DNA of 64,000 nucleotides from Ruditapes philippinarum (lineage: Eukaryota): the NCBI RefSeq assembly GCF_026571515.1, contig NW_026853814.1, positions 1 through 64,000 of the forward strand, read 5' to 3'. Each line of letters begins with the position of its first letter. Position 1 is the first letter of the stretch. The translations under genes and the position numbers were made by a program. Positions 6,061-59,800 of this stretch are shown in pieces. Below the pieces are notes generated by a model that was not told where the DNA came from, did not search any database, and saw nothing but the letters and a program-made list of their open reading frames with translations.

Positions 6061-6221
6061 NNNNNNNNNNNNNNNNNNNNNNNNNNNNNNNNNNNNNNNN
6101 NNNNNNNNNNNNNNNNNNNNNNNNNNNNNNNNNNNNNNNNNNNNNNNNNNNNNNNNNNNNNNNNNNNNNNNNNNNNNNNNNNNNNNNNNNNNNNNNNNNN
6201 NNNNNNNNNNNNNNNNNNNNN
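6061..6221. other. Assembly gap (N run)
   Basis: Run of N. Confidence 1.
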
Positions 6222-41347: not shown

Positions 41348-42729
41348 CTACATGTACTCAACTTTTGCTAAGCACCATATGTTTGAGTGTGAATATGTTT
41401 TGGGATAATTTTATTAACGCCGTGAGAAAGTTATTTAATGTTGATTTAATGTTTTATCAATTCAGCTGAAGAACGAATTTAACCATATAAATGAGTCTTA
41501 CTCTGATTTTGTGCTAGGGAAAAGGATCCCCTTTTTAAAGATTTTAGAACATGCAGCGTATTTTTCAAATTTTTTTTTTTCTTGTTTTCTTGTGAATCGT
41601 GACTATCACTGACAGCTTAACAGCGGCTTCTCAAACACCCTATTAGATTTCTGATCGTTTTAACGGATATGGCTGCCCATTCTTGGACCTATATGGCTCC
41701 AAGGTCCTGGATAGTTATTGGTTGCAGCTGACGAGATGAAGTTCTAACCTGCAGCTGATTCCACATGTGTTCTATTGGATTAAAATCAGGTGAGCGAGCT
41801 GGTCAGTCCATGCGATCAATAGACTTTCTCTCTAGGAAGTCCTGGGCCATCCTGGCGCTATGGGGCGAGCATTATTATCAATTAGAATGAACTGATCGCC
41901 GACTGCACTAGCATACAACCTAACCTGATTGTCTAACATGCCGTCTATGTATCGCTGAACTGCCAATGTGCCTCTACTTAGCACAACCAGGTCGGTTCAT
42001 CCATCCCAGCTGATGCCTTCCCACACCAAAACTGACCCACCTCCGTAGCAGTCATCCTGCAACCGTTCACCTCGTCTTCTCCAGTGTCGATCATGCCTAT
42101 CTGTGAAGTCTAGGCAGAACCTTGACTCATCAGTGAAAAGAACGTGTCTCCAGTGTTGCATGGTCAACCGTGTATGCTCCATGGTCCATTACAAACGGGT
42201 CTGGCGATGTAAACGCGTCATGAGGATACGTATGCAAGGTGTTTTCGATATCAAATTAGCATCATGCTGCCTTCTACGTACCGTCTGCGTGACAAAACGG
42301 ACCCTGAAGCATTAGCAAGGTAATTTCGAAGAGAAGTTGCTGTCGAAAACCTTGCACGACGTGCCTTAACTACCAAAGGCCGATGCTGAGCTGGCGTGTG
42401 GCCCTTTTCCTATCTCCAGCATCCTCCTGGCGGGCGTACCATATAGCCATTATATCTCCCAGACGGTGTGGTGTACACCAATAAGCCGGTAGTCGCAATA
42501 TAGCAAAAGACGTCACATGTGATTGTACACCCGATCAAAAACAGGAAAATATTGGGATGCATGCTTTCCATGTTAGACGATGTGCAACGATTAGTCAACA
42601 CCGATTCATGCCAGGGGACTATCTCAAAGCATTGGCTACATCAGAATTTTCAAAAATTGGAAATAAAATCTGTTTTATACTTGTGATAATATAATATTTA
42701 ACTTATGGTGCTTAGCAAAAGTTGAGTAG
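41348..42729 (-). mobile_element. Tc1-family transposon with both TIRs and a disrupted transposase
   Basis: TIR CTACTCAACTTTTGCTAAGCACCATA at both ends, TA-flanked. Minus-strand WRHVLFTDESRF, GGGSVLVW.GI, DNNARPH and PARSPDFNPIEHMW with stops and frameshifts. Confidence 0.93.
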
Positions 42730-50800: not shown

Positions 50801-53800
50801 TGAACCTATACGAATATAATACTCTATTTATCACATACCCAAAATAAAGACTGTTTTAAGTGAAAAAGAATCATTTTCTCATTGTCATGCCTATAGTGTA
50901 ATACTTATAATTAGCACGTTTTTATACTCTGTTTGTATAAGGGCCATGTAATACCATTTCCAAGGGTCGCAAAAGCGTAATGTGATAAATAGATATATCT
51001 TCCATATCAAGCTAAGCAACAACTGATTTCTTCCAAACCTGATGTTAAGTATTTACATCTATTAAGAACAAATAAATAATAAAGGGTGTAGTTGATACTT
51101 ATATCAGTTAAACACAACTGTCAACTGCAAATATTTAACTACTTTTCAAATAAGGAAATATAGATACAATATATCATTTTTTTATATATTACAAAAAAGA
51201 AAATTTTAAGATGTTGGACTGTCCTGAATTCTGAAATATTCCTTGAAAACTTTCATCCAAGCAGAACTGATCAATGTCTTAATCTTTTGGCCAAAGTAAA
51301 ATCTTTACCTTGCTAACATTAAGGTCTGGTATACAAATATCACAGTTTTCTCTGCCAAGTTTTGCTCCAGTACATGTTACAATGTGCAATGTTCCTACAG
51401 GGAGATAATCCGACTCCAAGACCATCATTCTTATACAAGGGGGATAACTTCCTGCCACCTCTGAAAAAATATATATTTATTTATTTCTACATTTATTTAT
51501 GACAACTTTTTGAATAGCCTTGTTCTGTTACTAGCTAAAACTAGCTAAAGCATGCACATACATAACCAGTGGTAGAGTGGTTAATGCATCAGACTAGTAA
51601 TCTAACGATTGATGGCTGACTGGGTTCAAACCCTGTCAGTTGGAAGCTATTGTTTCATGGAGCAGGTAATTTTACAATCGATGGTTCCATGGAAAAATTA
51701 CAAAATGAGACTTGGCTTTCTACAATAACTAAAATCAATTCTAAATAAACTAAAACATATGAAAGTCAAAAATCAGCAAAAGTTGTCTTCTCTTGTGTTT
51801 CTACAGGTATATCTAGCTACATATGATAATTTTGATTTTTACAAAATAATCTTATAAAAGAAAATAACTAGAGGATGCTTTTGTAAAAAAGCGCATGTCT
51901 CCCCCACTGCACTGTGACCTTGACCTTTGACCCCAAAAACAATAGGGATCATCTGCTCTATAAGACCAATCATCCTATGAAGTTTGAGGGCTGTAGGTCA
52001 AAAGGAACTCTAGTTATCATCCGGAAACGAGAAATTGACCAACGGTCACTGTGACCTTGACCTTGACCTTTGACCCCAAAAACAATAGGGATCATCTGCT
52101 CTATAAGACCAATCATCCTATGAAGTTTGAGGGCTGTAGGTCAAAAGGAACTCTAGTTATCATCCGGAAACCGAGAAATTGACCAACGGTCACTGTGACC
52201 TTGACCTTTGAACTACTGACCCCAAAAACAATAGGGATCATCTGCTCAATAAAGCCCAATCATCCTATGAAGTTTGAGGTCTGTAGGTCTAAAGGAACTT
52301 TAGTTATCATCCGGAAACGAGAAATTGACCAACGGTCAGTGTGACCTTGACCTTTTGACCTACTGACCCCAAAAACAATAGGATCATCAGCTCTATAAGA
52401 CCAATCATCCTATGAAGTTTGAGGGCTGTAGGTCAAAAGGAACTCTAGTTATCATCCGGAAACGAGAAATTGACCAACGGTCACTGTGACCTTGACCTTT
52501 GACCTACTGACCCCAAAAAACAATAGGGATCATCTGCTCTATAAGACCAATCATCCTATGAAGTTTGAGGGCTTTAGGTCAAAAGGAACTCTAGTTATCA
52601 TCCGGAAACGAGAAATTGACCAACGGTCACTGTGACCTTGACCTTTGACCTACTGACCCCAAAAACAATAGGGATCATCAGCTCTATAAGACCAATCATC
52701 CTATGAAGTTTGAGGGCTGTAGGTCAAAAGGAACTCTAGTTATCGTCCGGAAACGAAGAATGGACGGACGGACTGACGGACTGACGGACGGACGGACGGA
52801 CGGACGGACTGACGGACAGGGCAAAAACAATATGTCTCCCCCCGAGGTGGGGGAGACATAATAAATGCAATATGGAAACTTTCCAGTTTTGTTTATGGAT
52901 ATATCTGGTGGTACATTATTTCAAGCTTGAACAATTGCTTGTTCTTGGTATTCAAAACTTCATAACAAAATTAATAAAGTTGTTTAAAATATGAAATTAT
53001 TTACAATTTAATCAACTAGTGCTATTGTTATTTACAATACATATGAAACTTACCTCTTTCAATTGAGTCATTTTTTTAAACTTGAAATATTTTCTCCTCT
53101 TTTTAGATATTTTTTTTAATTTATGGGATAAAAAAGTGAATATAATAAATACATATCTACAGTACAGCAGTCAAACCTTGTTCTTCTTCATAGCTTTCAT
53201 TCCCATCCATATCTTCATACATATCTTCATCAGTATCACTGTAGTAAGAACTGTAACTCTCACTTGACTGTTCAATATCTGAGTCAGTAAGCTCCCCTGA
53301 TTCAGCTTCATTCTCACTACCATCACTATGACTACGATAACTTCTACTACTTTCACTACGCCTTTCTCTATGATGATGCCTCCTTTCAGATTTCTTTTCA
53401 TGTGACTTTCTTGAATTACTTTCCATACTGTTTAACTGATGGTCATCCTTGAAATTATTGATTACTGCAGTATCTTTTAAATTATCAGATTCGTTTGCAT
53501 CATTCATATTATCATCATCAACATGTTCTTCACCATCTATCTCAATAACCTCATCTGCATCATCTATAACAATAAACTCATTTTCAGAGTCAAGATCAAA
53601 CTCTTCAGCACTATTTGTTGTAAGATCCTCATCACCGTCATCAACTTCATCCTTACCGGATAACTTACTGTCTTTTGATTGTAAAGTCTTGGACTTTGTC
53701 ATTTTGGCAGATGGCTCTGTATGTTTTTTCCTTTCATTTCTTTTCTTAACTTTTGTTCTCTCACCATGATCATTTTCTCTCACCTTAACATCATTTTCAT

Positions 53801-56800
53801 CACTATGCATCTCCTTCAACTCTTTTCCATACTCCCTTTTGCCATGTCTTCGTTTAGACCTACTTCTACTTCTCCGCTTGCCCCTTCTTTCATTTCTATC
53901 ATATGACCTATAACCTCTCTTACTCTTCCTCTCTGACCTATAACCTTCTTCACCTGACCTTCGGCGTCTGTCATTACCACTTTCACCACTGTCAACAATA
54001 TCTGTATATTTTCTTTTTCTTTCCCTTTTTTCGTGATATGAGTCTCTTCTATGCTGTGACCTATTTCTCAACTGATTTTCTTTCTCTGCTTGTCTTCTCT
54101 CTTTCCGGTTTTTGAACACCTGAAATAAAATGAATCTAGGTCAAGGTCGCTCTGCTGATTATAGTTACCTAGGGCATGCTTCCGAGCATTTCTCGCATAC
54201 GGTGAAATCTTCAAGTCTTCCAATCCCAACAAAACTTGACACATCACTCCATCATCCATTCTGTTGCACTGAGAATAGACAGAAGAAAAGAAAAAGAGAA
54301 AATAAAGGCTGATATTTATTTAATTTTGAAAACTTCTATTCAATAACATAATTGATTTGCTTACTTTCAAGAGAAAATTTGAAATCATTTTATTAAAGCT
54401 AATTCAATAAAATATTTGCATGGTAACGACATAGTTAAATAAAGATACTTTTTATAGCACAATGCTTATTGCATACTTTTTTAAAATCTAGTCATTTGTA
54501 TTATACCACACATTCCACTGTTTTGTTACTCAATGTAAGGAACAGACTATGGGCATAAAATAATTGTTTTCATTTCACTACAATGTATATGCAACAAATA
54601 CTGCTTTCCCATACAATGAATTCTTTTTTTTTTGTTGTAATTTTCTGATTCCATGTTTATCCATATAAAATAGGCATGGACAATATTTTATTTCTATATA
54701 AATGTATACGCACTTTAATGATTTCAAAAGTTTTATGATTTTTTGATGATATTCATAACTATACAATGTGTTAAAAATTTACACTTCTGTCATTTTTCTC
54801 CTTGACAATGAAATTAGCATTTATTATGTTATCTTATTATTTATATGATATAACGTTTAGCCTACTGGTGGCAACTCATTTTACCCATGCATCCAGTGCA
54901 GACCTGAAGATCAGTTAGCATATATGTGCCATCTGATCATGACAGCACTGTTTGCTATTCATTCAATATCTTAAAGGCCCATTATGCCTCAGAAATGCTA
55001 TCAGTTTCATTTTTCAAAAACTTTTATTTATTGGTATCTTGTTACAGTTTCTAAAAAAACATTTGCCATAAAGATGAACTACCGTTTACTTTCTTTGCTA
55101 TGTGTCAATTAGTAAAAATATAGTAAATTAGTATTTTGTATGAAAGTCAAAATACTACTTTGTTTACATTATTCAACCTTGCACATTTTGTGGTACTTTC
55201 CTCAGTTGTTTTAACATCAAACTAGCTCTAAATAAATTAATAAACATTTTTAAACACATGGTTTTCACATTTATAAAGAATTAAAACAAGAGCTGTCCGT
55301 AGGACAGCAACGCTCAACTATTCTTAGTGCTTGATAGTAAAAATAAATGCTTGATACAGTTACCTCCTCCTGTTTACAGGTTGGGGTAATGATGGTGAAC
55401 AAGTGTGCAAAAGTTTCAAAGCCATATGTCAATGGACTTTGAAAATATTTGAGGTATTACAAAAACTTTAACGTAAATTCTAAGTCAAAAAGGGGCATAA
55501 TTCTGTCAAAATGCTTGAAACAGTTACCTCCTCCTGTTTACAGGTTGGGGTAATGATGGTGAACAAGTGTGCAAAGTTTCAAAGCCATAAAAGCCATATG
55601 TCAATGGACTTTGAAAATATTTGAGGTATTACAAAAACTTTAACGTAAATTCTAAGTCAAAAAGGGGCATAATTCTGTCAAAATGCTTGATACAGTTACC
55701 TCCTCCTGTTTACAGGTTGGGGTAATGATGGTGAACAAGTGTGCAAAGTTTCAAAGCCATATGTCAATGGACTTTGAAAATATTTGAACTATTACAAAAA
55801 CTTTAACGTAAATTCTAAGTAAAAAAAAGGGGCATAATTCTGTCAAAATGCTTGATACAGTTACCTCCTCCTGTTTACAGGTTGGGGTAATGATGGTGAA
55901 CAAGTGTGCAAAGTTTCAAAGCCATATGTCAATGGACTTTGAAAATATTTGAGGTATTACAAAAACTTTAACGTAAATTCTAAGTCGAAAAAGGGGCATA
56001 ATTCTGTCAAAATGCTTGATACAGTTATCTCCTCCTGTTTACAGGTTGGGGTAATGATGGTGAACAAGTGTGCAAAGTTTCAAAGCCATATGTCAATGGA
56101 CTTTGAAAATATTTGAGGTATTACAAAAACTTTAACGTAAATTCTAAGTCAAAAAGGGGCATAATTCTGTCAAAATGCTTGATACAGTTACCTCCTCCTG
56201 TTTACAGGTTGGGGTAATGATGGTGAACAAGTGTGCAAAGTTTCAAAGCTATATGTCAATGGACTTTGAAAATATTTGAGGTATTACAAAAACTTTAACG
56301 TAAATTCTAAGTCGAAAAAGGGGCATAATTCTGTCAAAATGCTTGATACAGTTATCTCCTCGTGTCTACATGTTGGGGTCATGATGGTGAACAAGTGTGC
56401 AAAGTTTCAAAGCCATATGTCAATGGACTTTGAAAATATTTGAGGTATTACAAAAACTTTAACATAAGTGGTTATGCCGACGCTCGGGTGACTACAATAG
56501 CTCTACTTATTCTTATCGAATAGTCGAGCTAAAAAATATGGATTTGTGAGGCATAATGGGCCTTTAACATTTACCCTTTAAGTTAAGTTGATGACTGGTT
56601 TTGTCCATATTAATATATGGACAGTTCCAGTTATAACATTTAGCATGGTAAAAGTTAAATATGTAACAGTTCAATTTCTAAACTTCATCTTTAAAGTTTT
56701 AAACAAGTTTGTGATGGCAAACTTTAAAAAAAATTCAAACCATTTTTCCACTTCACTCGGTCAAAATTATTTTATCTTTTCATTAATTCTTTATAATATT

Positions 56801-59800
56801 AGACATTATAAGTTTCCTAATAAATTGTTATGTTTCGAGTTGAACTTACTTTGTCATCAGCTGAATGCCTCTCATTGTCCCTTTTCTTTCTTGCTGTATT
56901 TCTAGATTTTCTAACTTTGGAAAGGTTTTTCTTAGACTGATCATGATCCATGAAGTTTGGCTGTTCTGTTGTCTTAAAACATAAATTTGCAGAATTTTGA
57001 TAGCTCTCAGTCAAAACTAACAATTCAGCATTACAGTCATATACTATTAGTTTTATTAATTTTTTGTTACTTTTGTTGTTTTCACTTTTAAATTAACTCC
57101 ACTGAGGTTTTATTTGACATAACATAATGATTTTGTTTGTTTGTTTGTTTTATTGGATTTTACATCACACTGAAACAGTATAGGTCATATGGCAACGTTC
57201 CAGCTTGACTGGTGGAGGAAGACCTCAGGTGCCCATTAGAAAGGAACGCGCCCCTGAGTAGAACTAGCTGGATAGCTTCCTCAGATGAAAAAAATCCAAA
57301 GTCCCCGTCAAGATTTGAACCCACAGTGGTGAGGGGCAAGTGGTTTGAAATCAACGAACTTAACCACTCGTCCACGAACACTCCTGACATAATGAAAAAA
57401 ATCCACGAAGCAAGAAATGGTGTATAGATTTAATTCAAAATCATATAAATATCAAGTCCTAGGAAAGATAATAACCAAATATCATACCTGACTTTGTGTA
57501 GGAATCTCTATCTGAGAATGAAATAGGTATTCACCAGTGTCATAGTCATAATAATAGTAGATGCCCGTCTTAGGATCATAGAATAATGACTTGTGCTGTA
57601 AATAGAGGTAAAGATAAAACTTGAATGAAATACTTATTTTATTTAAAATATTATTTCTGACCAGATTAATATTATATTCATTATATCTTAAGAAATGCAT
57701 TGTATTAAGAAAGAGCTTTGATATGATGTTTATGTTCTTTTTGGGTTTTATGTCGCAACTTCCAGCAATAAAGGTGGAAGACTTCAGCTGACCCCTTTGT
57801 GCACCTGAGTAGAATTCCTGACATTTGTAAGCTAGCTGGATGCTTCCTTGTCTAAAACTTCCAAAGTTCCTAGCCAGATTGATTTCAAAGATGTCTCTCT
57901 TTCTAACCCTATCTTTATCTGCTGAATTCTTTTAAAATAAACTTGTCATGTACTTATATTTTGTGAGTTTAACCCTTTAAATAATTCATTAATTGGACCT
58001 GTCCAGCTTCCATATTTGGAATACTCCAGCTTAGTAATGTGACATTATGTCAAGATGAAAGATAATGTATTTCAACCTCCAATCTTCTATAAAATTGTCA
58101 AAATGATAGTATGTTGTTTGAACTAAGAAAGAAAAACAGTTTACTGGGCCTATTCAATATTGCATATTCATACCAGAAAAAAAAGGACATTCATCTGAAA
58201 ATCTTGAAAGTGTATTAAGATTTTATACTAACTTGATCATAGTAATAACCAGTGGCTGGGTGGTAATAGAGGCCCGAATGATCGTCATACACATAACCTT
58301 GATCCTGCAGCATGTTGGCCTGTTGTTGTTGTACCACAGCCTCTGCTGCCTGTTTTATACTGTCAGCTATAGAGATAGCGTCCATCTCTGAGCCTGCCTG
58401 CTAATACAACAAAGCAAAACCATTTCGTGTTAGATTCTCTCTTTAAAAAGACTGAATTTATAAGATAATTACAGTGAAGTAACAGTAATTATCAGATTCA
58501 TAAAATGACTGATTAACAAACGTTCTATCATTTTTCTATGTAAATAAAAAACAACATCTTAACATGAACAGGGCTGGCAAAATCTGATTTTGACATACTT
58601 GTTCGTTTTTAAGTGAAGCATTTTTCATTTTGTCCGTATGATATTTACATAGTTAATTCTTGAAAATCTTCACTTGTCTGTACAGGCTGTTGGACAACCT
58701 GGGCAATACGGACAATTGATTTTGCCAGCCCTGATGAATAAACTAATGTTGGAGTTACAGTAACAGACACTTTGTATAAGAAATACAGCATCACCATGGT
58801 AACTAAGCATTTGTAACACCCACAATCCCAGCAAGCCAATTGAATCTCGGAATACTTAATGCTCTTAATACATTCAAACATTTCAAGCAAATATGGTACC
58901 TTCAATACAAGTTAATTTACTATAATTCTAAATCTACAACACTTTCTGGCTTAAAAGTAACATACAAAGTACCTGCAGTGTAGAAGGTATCTCAGGAGTG
59001 ACTATAGCTACATCAGGTGTCTCACTTGTCTCGACAGACATTTTCATTGACTCATCATCGGCATTCCATTTTGGCATAGTGTCAACTCCTGTTGTGTAAC
59101 ATTAAATATTTAAGAGTCAGGGCCTGGAAATCTAATTTTTTCTCACTAACAGTGAAAACAATCCACTCTTTAAAAAAAAGCAGTTATTCATTTGACATGA
59201 TAAAAATATCTGTTATAAATAAACTTAACATACATACAAAACATACATAATAACTGGTTAGAATTATATTTTGTCCGATGAAATTGTTCCATTTTTCAAA
59301 TTCTTCCAAAAAGAGCATCATACTGTGTAAAGATACAAAACATAATGTCTACAACTTGTCTAAATAGTAGGGGCTTCCATTAAGTTCCAAACTTAAAGTC
59401 AGAGAGTGCAAATTGTCCGACATTGGACGTCACATTATATAGGTAAAGAAGAAAAAGCATTACATTTTGGAAGTCACAACCCAAAATCAAAGGGTAAATT
59501 ACTCCCAAACTCCCACTTATGGGAGCCTTGATTAAGTCAGCATGAATTCAATTAATTCTGTCATTGTGCCACAAGATTTCATTTCATGTATATACTTACT
59601 AACAAACACTAACCTGTTTTTTTAACCAAAAAAATATACTTGACGTGTCTTAACTAAATCATACATATTTCAAACTTGTCATGAATTATCTACATCACCA
59701 GTTACTATGATAATAGTCAGATTTATTTTTTCTATTTCCTCATCACAAAATTCACCTGTGGTATAATTCAGAAAGTCCTCCTTATCTACCTGTACATGTA

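What the first reader, a model, noticed from the sequence alone, without database searches (positions are those of the whole stretch)
53177..54268. Mutually exclusive exon switch in AGGF1: 33-aa peptide versus 314-aa RS/acidic domain
Seen: exon A (54169-54268) and exon B (53177-54119) both run phase 0 to 1 between a phase-0 donor (56850) and a phase-1 acceptor (51460), and they are only 49 nt apart. Either alone keeps frame into the FHA domain. Joining both gives TAG after about 19 codons, retaining the 49 nt gives a stop at 54068-54070, and skipping both frameshifts. A branch-like TTGAC sits about 27 nt from A's donor. Known: donor-to-branch-point steric hindrance enforces exclusive splicing in alpha-tropomyosin, and OCRE and G-patch are RNA-processing modules. 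Inference: a hard-wired binary switch adds or removes a large RS-like, acidic disordered region between OCRE and FHA, possibly controlling nuclear speckle localisation or condensate behaviour. I do not know of this being described for AGGF1.
Basis: partly seen in the sequence, partly recalled or inferred. Interest (0 to 1): 0.8.

Follow-up and report, generated by a model that had tools for sequence, protein, structure and literature searches.

The report
Alternative short exon in clam AGGF1
A clam splicing-factor gene (AGGF1-like) has a real extra 100-base exon just 49 bases in front of its large linker exon. The two are probably used one at a time, but the reads that would prove this were not seen.

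Summary
Exon A is 54268-54169, a 49-nt spacer follows, and exon B is 54119-53177. Both are 3n+1 and open in frame. A joined to B stops at the 20th codon after A. Retaining the spacer stops at 54070-54068. Skipping both shifts the frame.

Exon A looks like more than chance:
- It has the best acceptor between exons U and F.
- It is the only one of 833 open, frame-keeping AG..GT candidates with strong sites.
- Its GC is 0.45 against 0.31 in the intron.
- It is single copy.
- It lies in a bin with assembled depth in 2 of 3 probable-RNA contig runs, while neighbouring unique intron has none.

Contigs directly show U>B (skipping A) and B>F in run X8. No junction of exon A was visible, because repeats in the introns swamped the single read-laying output. 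Contig ends in the two runs with depth over A's bin fit A>F rather than A>B, but this is indirect and depths partly disagree.

Verdict: a real alternative exon, probably mutually exclusive with B (about 0.5). A poison exon or a young cryptic exon remain possible. Steric enforcement and any speckle or condensate role are inference. Nothing was noted at this place before in the scan. Interest is modest.

The parts
56850..56972 (-). Exon U, the upstream constitutive exon. It ends in phase 0 at 56850 (AAA|GTAAGT). The acceptor is at 56972 or, 12 nt later and still in frame, at 56960.
   Evidence: Sequence. X8 contig record 19 joins 56958-56848 to 54117-53828; 2 letters at the joint fit either side.
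54269..54310 (-). Long pyrimidine tract and CAG acceptor of exon A. PolyY is 0.89 over -20..-3, the highest of the 11 strong acceptors in the U-F interval.
54169..54268 (-). Exon A: 100 nt, phase 0 to 1, 33 codons plus 1 base, donor TAG|GTAACT (6.5 bits), GC 0.45, single copy.
   Evidence: Depth over its bin in X4, X1 and about 106 letters of raw RNA reads in X24; none in X8.
54120..54168 (-). 49-nt spacer between A's donor and B's acceptor. TTGAC lies at 54144-54140, with the candidate branch A at 54141, 27 nt from the donor.
   Evidence: The branch point is inferred from the motif only.
53177..54119 (-). Exon B: 943 nt, phase 0 to 1, 314 codons. Residues 1-110 have net charge +20 (R 25%); residues 171-314 have net charge -35. 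Weak donor AAG|GTTTGA (2.9 bits).
   Evidence: Contigs of X1, X4 and X8 cover it. X8 joints U>B and B>F.
51309..51460 (-). Exon F, the first FHA-region exon, with a phase-1 acceptor after TTTTTTCAG.
   Evidence: X8 record 17 joins 53177 to 51460. The X1 and X4 contigs begin at 51462, two letters (AG) before F.

Best explanation
Exon A is a genuine, sample-dependent alternative exon of a bivalve AGGF1-type gene, and it is used instead of the large exon B, not with it. The default mRNA joins U to B to F and encodes a 314-residue basic-then-acidic disordered linker between OCRE and FHA. In some samples the strong acceptor of A is used. A's donor then lies only 49 nt from B's acceptor, so at most about 37 nt separate it from any usable branch point. 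That pairing is therefore disfavoured, and A's donor joins the next acceptor, F. The reading frame agrees: both exons are 3n+1, so only one-of-two gives a full protein, while A+B, A+spacer+B and neither all run into early stops.

Shown: the geometry, the frames, the splice-signal strength, U>B and B>F joints, and assembled depth over the bin that holds A in 2 of 3 contig runs.
Inferred: the A>F and U>A joints (from contig ends only), the steric block, and any function of the short isoform.
For: - Sequence and frames.
- A is the only 1 of 833 frame-keeping candidates with strong sites. It has the best acceptor in the interval, and its donor (6.5 bits) is stronger than B's (2.9 bits).
- Exon-like GC of 0.45 and single copy.
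-, A used or skipped: X8 has no depth in A's bin and has unbroken contigs U>B (record 19) and B>F (record 17).
-, branch at F: X1 and X4 have depth in A's bin, and there the F contig starts at 51462, which is 'AG' plus F (X1 record 1; X4 contig at 51420 with from_end 43). The X1 B contig (record 2) runs 28 letters past 53177. Together that is the 30-letter overlap of a graph branch, meaning a second predecessor of F that also ends in AG. A ends TAG.
-, no branch at B: X4 record 15 runs 18 letters upstream through B's acceptor unbroken, so no second predecessor of B (neither A>B nor a retained spacer) survived in that assembly.
-, not pre-mRNA: unique intron bins are 0 in these runs, so unspliced RNA is an unlikely source of the branch.
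Against: - No junction of A was seen. 175 joints and 6137 pieces were not shown, and the call is capped at one.
- In X4 the depth of F (18.3-20.3) equals that of B's 3' part (17.8-20.2), which leaves no visible surplus for an A>F form. My estimate for A (8-20) rests on binned, flat contig depths.
- The 'remainder' control failed: X8 has 391 unexplained depth-letters in the lower bin although A's bin is empty there. The ratio test against spacer retention is therefore not clean.
- The branch at F could also come from any other exon ending in AG, from unspliced RNA (the intron ends CAG), or from a polymorphism at B's third-last base.
- Coding signal in A is weak: log-odds +3.9 bits. About 24 of 245 (9.8%) stop-free intron windows do as well, and every in-frame window of B does better.
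- The one related ORF, P0001, differs at 3 of the 30 residues of A that it covers.
- No protein carrying A's peptide was found in the 46-145 aa range (1 hit of 1 candidate, a genomic read-through ORF).
- Introns of about 50-56 nt are spliced in other animals (PMC13644364 introduction; 10.1101/784868 abstract).
Confidence: 0.5

Rival explanations
1. Poison cassette exon. A is included together with B by removal of the 49-nt intron. The 100-nt insertion shifts the frame, translation stops 20 codons into B, and the mRNA is degraded or yields a truncated OCRE-only protein. This would be a way for a splicing cofactor to limit its own output.
For: A+B gives a stop at the 20th codon after A. AGGF1 is described as a splicing factor (PMC13111387, passages), and such genes often carry poison exons (my recall). 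Another note of this scan reports a U1-70K poison exon in this genome (unchecked). A's coding signal is weak, and the one related ORF has 3 replacements in the 30 residues of A that it covers. In X4, F depth equals B 3' depth.
Against: X4 record 15 passes B's acceptor unbroken for 18 letters, so there is no second predecessor of B in a run with depth over A's bin. The branch is at F, not at B. A's estimated depth is not far below B's in X4 and X1, which is unexpected for a degraded form. The 49-nt intron, with at most about 37 nt from donor to branch, is at or below the usual lower size of animal introns (PMC13644364). A being both 3n+1 and stop-free in the gene's frame would be a coincidence of about 0.33 times 0.1-0.2 (my estimate).
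Confidence: 0.2
2. Young, cryptic or allele-specific exon without a function of its own. A chance open stretch with good splice signals is spliced in at a low or genotype-dependent level in this highly heterozygous species. Its partners are mixed (F, B, repeat-derived pseudo-exons), and the frame compatibility is coincidence.
For: By itself, 1 open in-frame pair among 16 strong pairs is what chance could give. Coding signal is weak. A's peptide was found in no other protein of 46-145 aa in the protein collection and has no second copy in this genome. Heterozygosity of about 4% is reported for the Manila clam assembly that matches this genome's statistics (PMC9803972). Presence in X1/X4 and absence in X8 could be genotype. 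The introns hold tandem repeats with strong splice-like sites.
Against: A has the strongest acceptor in the interval, a roughly 40-nt pyrimidine tract, and exon-like GC. Depth over A's bin is comparable with B's in two runs from two studies.
Confidence: 0.2
3. Exon A is not part of AGGF1 mRNA at all. The depth in bin 54190-54385 would then come from another transcript or from leftover DNA or pre-mRNA.
For: The runs are only guessed to be RNA. No piece lying on A was listed.
Against: Neighbouring unique intron bins are 0 in the same runs, while exons U, B and F are covered. The flank and A itself are single copy.
Confidence: 0.1

Closest known systems
Mutually exclusive exons enforced by donor-to-branch-point proximity (alpha-tropomyosin exons 2/3, recalled; 57 of the human MXE clusters, 9%, in PMC5740500)
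   Same: Two adjacent alternative exons are separated by an intron too short to hold a donor and a branch point at working distance. Here the whole intron is 49 nt, against the <50 bp criterion of PMC5740500.
   Different: A and B are not homologous duplicates and differ about tenfold in length (33 versus 314 codons). They code for a disordered linker, whereas 87% of the MXE-encoded regions that paper analysed lie within secondary-structure elements (PMC5740500). The branch point is unmapped, and the junctions of A were not seen.
[quoted passage not shown]
   Same: Both exons are 3n+1. Both together, or neither, gives an early stop.
   Different: Whether joint-inclusion transcripts exist here is unknown.
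Poison (NMD) cassette exons in splicing-factor genes
   Same: An alternative exon in a splicing-cofactor gene brings a premature stop when included next to the constitutive exon.
   Different: Poison exons need not be open and frame-compatible with skipping of the next exon. Here the contig ends argue against an A>B junction.
Vertebrate AGGF1 (VG5Q)
   Same: OCRE, FHA and G-patch in that order. Nuclear and splicing-related roles are reported (PMC13111387; bioRxiv 10.64898/2026.06.30.735655, passages).
   Different: The clam linker exon B has no detectable relative among 1.84 billion representative proteins. I found no paper that describes a mutually exclusive or poison exon within AGGF1 itself, judging from listings and passages of two hits.

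Membership tests
Mutually exclusive exon pair (RNA criteria of PMC5740500) | Junction from the upstream exon to B that bridges A | tested here: met
   X8 record 19 joins 56958-56848 to 54117-53828; 2 letters are ambiguous.
Mutually exclusive exon pair (RNA criteria of PMC5740500) | Junction from A to the downstream exon that bridges B (54169>51460) | tested here: inconclusive
   Not visible in the truncated tables. Indirect only: F contigs of X1 and X4 start at AG+F, with a 30-letter overlap to the B contig.
Mutually exclusive exon pair (RNA criteria of PMC5740500) | Junction from the upstream exon into A (56850>54268) | tested here: inconclusive
   Not visible. Only depth over A's bin in X4, X1 and X24.
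Mutually exclusive exon pair (RNA criteria of PMC5740500) | No A-B joining reads, unless joint inclusion shifts the frame | tested here: met
   Joint inclusion shifts the frame, with a stop at the 20th codon after A, so the criterion holds whichever reads exist. No A-B joint was seen, and X4 record 15 is unbroken through B's acceptor.
Steric-hindrance MXE | Donor-to-branch-point distance below the working minimum (<50 bp in PMC5740500) | tested here: inconclusive
   The intron is 49 nt, so any branch point inside it is under 50 nt from the donor; the TTGAC motif lies at 27 nt. The branch point is not mapped and the species' minimum is unknown.
Classical duplicated MXE | The two exons are homologous, of similar length, and encode the same structural element | tested here: not met
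   33 versus 314 codons. A's peptide has no other match in the genome, at E up to 10.
Poison/NMD cassette exon | Transcripts that contain A joined to B, with a premature stop | tested here: inconclusive
   The stop is confirmed in sequence. The junction was not seen, and contig topology argues against it.
AGGF1 family | OCRE, FHA and G-patch domains in this order in one gene | tested here: met
   Pfam OCRE E=1.5e-07 at 58400-58234, with its second half at E=4.1e-4 (below cut-off) at 57931-57485. FHA E=1.6e-08 at 50719-50486. G-patch E=6.3e-15 at 48266-48060. Exons were searched one by one; the joined protein was not searched.
AGGF1 family | Orthology to named AGGF1 proteins by sequence search | not tested
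RS domain | A long run dominated by Arg-Ser dipeptides | tested here: not met
   14 RS/SR dipeptides in 314 residues. Residues 1-110 are R 25%, E 13%, K 12%, S 11%. This is a mixed-charge Arg-rich region, RS-like only.

The most novel reading that the evidence does not exclude
A non-homologous exon pair acts as a regulated two-state switch in a bivalve G-patch/OCRE splicing cofactor. The switch would be locked both by a sub-minimal 49-nt intron and by the reading frame. One state carries a 314-residue block-charged (basic then acidic) disordered linker, and the other replaces it with a 33-residue peptide. That would change how the protein partitions into nuclear bodies or engages its helicase partner, in a tissue- or condition-specific way.
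Probability: 0.15. Interest if true: 0.5.

Novelty: new member of a known kind. Interest (0 to 1): 0.3.

Why it matters
If A and B are truly exclusive, this is a clean natural case in which alternative splicing adds or removes a whole block-charged disordered region of a splicing cofactor while leaving all folded domains intact. That would be a convenient handle for asking what such linkers do.

It would also be an invertebrate example of exclusivity enforced by intron shortness plus frame between unrelated exons. Most catalogued MXEs are homologous duplicates.

The mechanisms themselves are known, the event may be species-specific, and its use is unproven. The value is therefore local rather than general.

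Tried and rejected
- Protein-database fishing for transcripts with exon A. The 83-aa open stretch 54319-54071 found 1 protein among 1 candidate: P0001, 63 aa, from JGI. It reads through the 49-nt spacer, so it is a genomic ORF, not a spliced product.
The metagenome scan matched 489 pattern stretches, and none was confirmed.
- Exon B against 1.84 billion representatives gave 0 hits at E<=0.001. In hindsight the exon A stretch would have been the better query.
- RNA structure. The pyrimidine tract before A is complementary to a purine run in B (21 nt, 86%). However, the 341-nt fold has z=-0.10, and 46 of 100 shuffles fold at least as well. Rejected as composition.
- Depth-ratio test for spacer retention. 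The X8 control leaves 391 unexplained depth-letters, so the test is not clean.
- Depth just upstream of F. It is explained by a dispersed repeat at about 51569-51656 (40 scored matches of 897 candidates), so it is not evidence for intron retention.
- Coding-potential test. It was equivocal. One search had two training pieces in the wrong frame and is superseded. still had one 28-codon piece of 680 codons in a wrong frame.
- mis-set U's acceptor and F's donor coordinates. Only its rows for OCRE1, A and B and U's donor score are used.
- Earlier notes of the scan: nothing at this place. The other look-ups gave only the species lead and two related notes.
- Literature. I saw only listings. I read passages of PMC13111387, PMC5740500, 10.64898/2026.06.30.735655, PMC13644364 and PMC9803972, and the abstract in the listing for 10.1101/784868.
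- The supplements of PMC9803972 (lists of alternative-splicing events in the Manila clam) were closed and may bear on this gene.
Full report
**The locus.** The window's minus strand carries one multi-exon gene between about 62.4 kb and 44.6 kb.
- Pfam finds an OCRE domain in the exon at 58400-58234 (E=1.5e-07), with its second half in the next exon (E=4.1e-4, below the curated cut-off).
- It finds an FHA domain at 50719-50486 (E=1.6e-08) and a G-patch at 48266-48060 (E=6.3e-15).
- That order is the AGGF1 architecture, which I recall rather than tested.
- I searched exon by exon.
- The genome (G000) has 1,408,138,951 bases in 15,874 contigs. This matches the long-read Manila clam assembly of PMC9803972 after its stated removal of 27 contigs: 15,908 contigs, 1,409,123,410 bp, GC 0.32, heterozygosity about 4% (passages).
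- Several unchecked notes of this scan also call it the Manila clam. I treat the species as probable, not proven.

**The observation.**
- U ends AAA|GTAAGT at 56850 in phase 0.
- Exon A is 54268-54169, 100 nt.
- A 49-nt spacer follows at 54168-54120, with TTGAC at 54144-54140. Its A at 54141 lies 27 nt from the donor and 21 nt from the acceptor.
- Exon B is 54119-53177, 943 nt.
- F begins at 51460 in phase 1.
- A then B gives a stop at the 20th codon after A. Spacer retention gives a stop at 54070-54068. U straight to F is out of frame with a stop at codon 10.
- B encodes 314 residues: E 15%, S 13%, R 13%, D 12%, K 10%. Net charge is +20 in residues 1-110 and -35 in residues 171-314. There are only 14 RS/SR dipeptides. 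It is a block-charged, RS-like linker, not a canonical RS domain.
- Neither A nor B hits any Pfam family. B has 0 hits at E<=0.001 among 1.84 billion representative proteins.

**Is exon A more than chance?**
- Between U and F there are 833 AG..GT candidates that are open and 3n+1. Only 1, exon A, also has a donor of >=4 bits, polyY >=0.7 and a pyrimidine at -3. The donor matrix is recalled.
- Without conditioning on frame there are 11 strong acceptors, 36 strong donors and 31 strong pairs. Of these, 16 do not involve B's body, and 14 of those 16 lie in two intronic tandem arrays. Only A is open and 3n+1. That alone could be chance.
- A has the best acceptor of the interval (polyY 0.89), and its donor (6.5 bits) is stronger than B's (2.9 bits).
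- Its GC is 0.45 against 0.31 for the surrounding intron.
- It is single copy as DNA and as peptide.
- Codon-usage log-odds in the gene's frame is +3.9 bits, against -18.6 and -1.0 in the other two frames. About 24 of 245 (9.8%) stop-free intron windows do as well, and all in-frame windows of B do better. The coding signal is equivocal.

**RNA evidence.**
- None of the 20 holders of the stretch is on record as RNA. 14 are guessed to be RNA, with about 100-200 million letters of contigs each.
- One raw RNA run of the species (X24) was added. I laid X24, X1, X4 and X8 on 51250-57100.
- Intronic repeats took nearly all the space in the tables: 175 joints and 6137 pieces were not shown.
- X8 record 19 joins U to B and skips A. 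X8 record 17 joins B (53177) to F (51460).
- The bin that holds 79 of A's 100 bases (54190-54385) has depth 7.88 in X4, 1.74 in X1 and 0 in X8. X24 has about 106 letters of reads there, at an overall exon depth of only about 1-4.
- The unique intron bins 54386-54581 and 51642-51837 are 0 in the three contig runs.
- So the bin that holds A carries assembled depth in 2 of 3 contig runs, which come from two studies, while the adjoining unique intron bins carry none. No listed piece lies on A itself.
- If all that depth lay on A's 100 bases, it would be about 20 in X4 and 4.6 in X1, against 11.7 and 6.7 for the adjoining B contig.

**Which partner does A have?** No junction of A was visible, and read laying is capped at one call. 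What remains is contig topology.
- In X1 the F contig (record 1) starts at 51462, the two letters AG before F. The B contig (record 2) runs 28 letters beyond 53177. Together that is the 30-letter overlap expected at a branch of a 31-mer graph.
- This means F has a second predecessor that also ends in AG but differs at the base before. B ends AAG, A ends TAG and the intron ends CAG.
- In X4 the contig over 51420 also ends at 51462 (from_end 43), unlike X8 (41), whose contig runs on into B.
- X4 record 15 passes B's acceptor unbroken, with 18 further letters that do not match the spacer. So no second predecessor of B (A>B, or a retained spacer) survived there.
- The pattern 'branch at F, none at B, only in the runs with depth over A's bin' is what A>F predicts. 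It is not what a poison cassette predicts.

**Against this reading.**
- F's depth in X4 (18.3-20.3) equals B's 3' depth (17.8-20.2), which leaves no surplus for an A form.
- The branch could stem from another AG-ending exon, from unspliced RNA, or from a polymorphism at B's third-last base.
- Graph cleaning can delete thin links.
- My ratio test against spacer retention fails its X8 control.

**Mechanism.**
- A 49-nt intron cannot place a branch point more than about 37 nt from the donor.
- PMC5740500 uses <50 bp as its criterion for steric interference and finds it in 9% of human MXE clusters. It finds frame incompatibility in 60%.
- On the other hand, a 56-nt human intron is spliced with SPF45 (10.1101/784868, abstract in the listing). 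A hard block is therefore not assured.
- The long UCUU-rich tract before A resembles PTB-regulated exons (recalled, untested).
- A base-pairing idea (A's pyrimidine tract with a purine run in B) has no support (z=-0.10).

**Conservation.**
- The only related sequence is P0001, a 63-aa JGI ORF that reads through the spacer. It is 94% identical and has 3 replacements (D>E, C>S, L>F) in the 30 residues of A that it covers.
- That level equals the species' reported heterozygosity, so it shows no special constraint.

**Comparison and novelty.**
- AGGF1 is reported as a nuclear G-patch protein and splicing factor (PMC13111387; 10.64898/2026.06.30.735655; passages).
- I found no paper that describes a mutually exclusive or poison exon within AGGF1 itself. 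One search gave 32 papers and one search gave 7. I saw listings only, plus AGGF1 passages of two of them.
- The mechanisms are known ones, so this is at most a new member of a known kind.

**Verdict.**
- Exon A is probably real.
- Mutual exclusivity with B is the best reading at about 0.5. The rivals are a poison exon at about 0.2, a cryptic or allele-specific exon at about 0.2, and not part of the mRNA at about 0.1.
- The functional claims are untested.

Noticed in passing
window 55345-56467 and 51915-52756: There are two intronic tandem arrays: 164-nt period with 6.8 copies, and 146-nt period with 5.8 copies. Their units carry strong acceptor- and donor-like sites. Both belong to very abundant repeat families, with contig depths in the thousands to above 100,000 in the RNA-like runs.
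   Followed up: partly
window 51569-51656: A dispersed repeat lies about 110 nt upstream of exon F's acceptor (40 scored matches at 79-91% identity, of 897 first-look candidates in the genome). It explains the read depth just upstream of F.
   Followed up: partly
window 53765-54119 (also donors after 53954, 53864, 53784, 53657): Exon B contains several strong internal donor-like sites. Use of the one after 53765 (8.1 bits) would give a 355-nt, 3n+1, in-frame short version that keeps only the basic half of the linker. No RNA evidence was seen for it.
   Followed up: no
window 54271-54307 versus 54002-54032: The pyrimidine tract before exon A is complementary to a purine-rich run inside exon B (21 nt, 86%). 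The 341-nt fold is no more stable than shuffles (z=-0.10).
   Followed up: yes
window 53177-54119: The 314-residue linker exon has no detectable relative among 1.84 billion representative proteins. Either it evolves very fast or this clade's AGGF1 is missing from that library.
   Followed up: partly
window 41835-42188, minus strand: Open stretches there read like a DDE transposase remnant of Tc1/mariner type. I recognised this by eye from the translation only.
   Followed up: no
window 56960-56972: Exon U has two in-frame acceptor candidates 12 nt apart (TTTTAAG|ACA and GAACAG|CCA). The X8 contig starts at 56958, so the choice is open.
   Followed up: no
window 6061-6221: There is a run of 161 N (assembly gap or masked). 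It was left alone.
   Followed up: no
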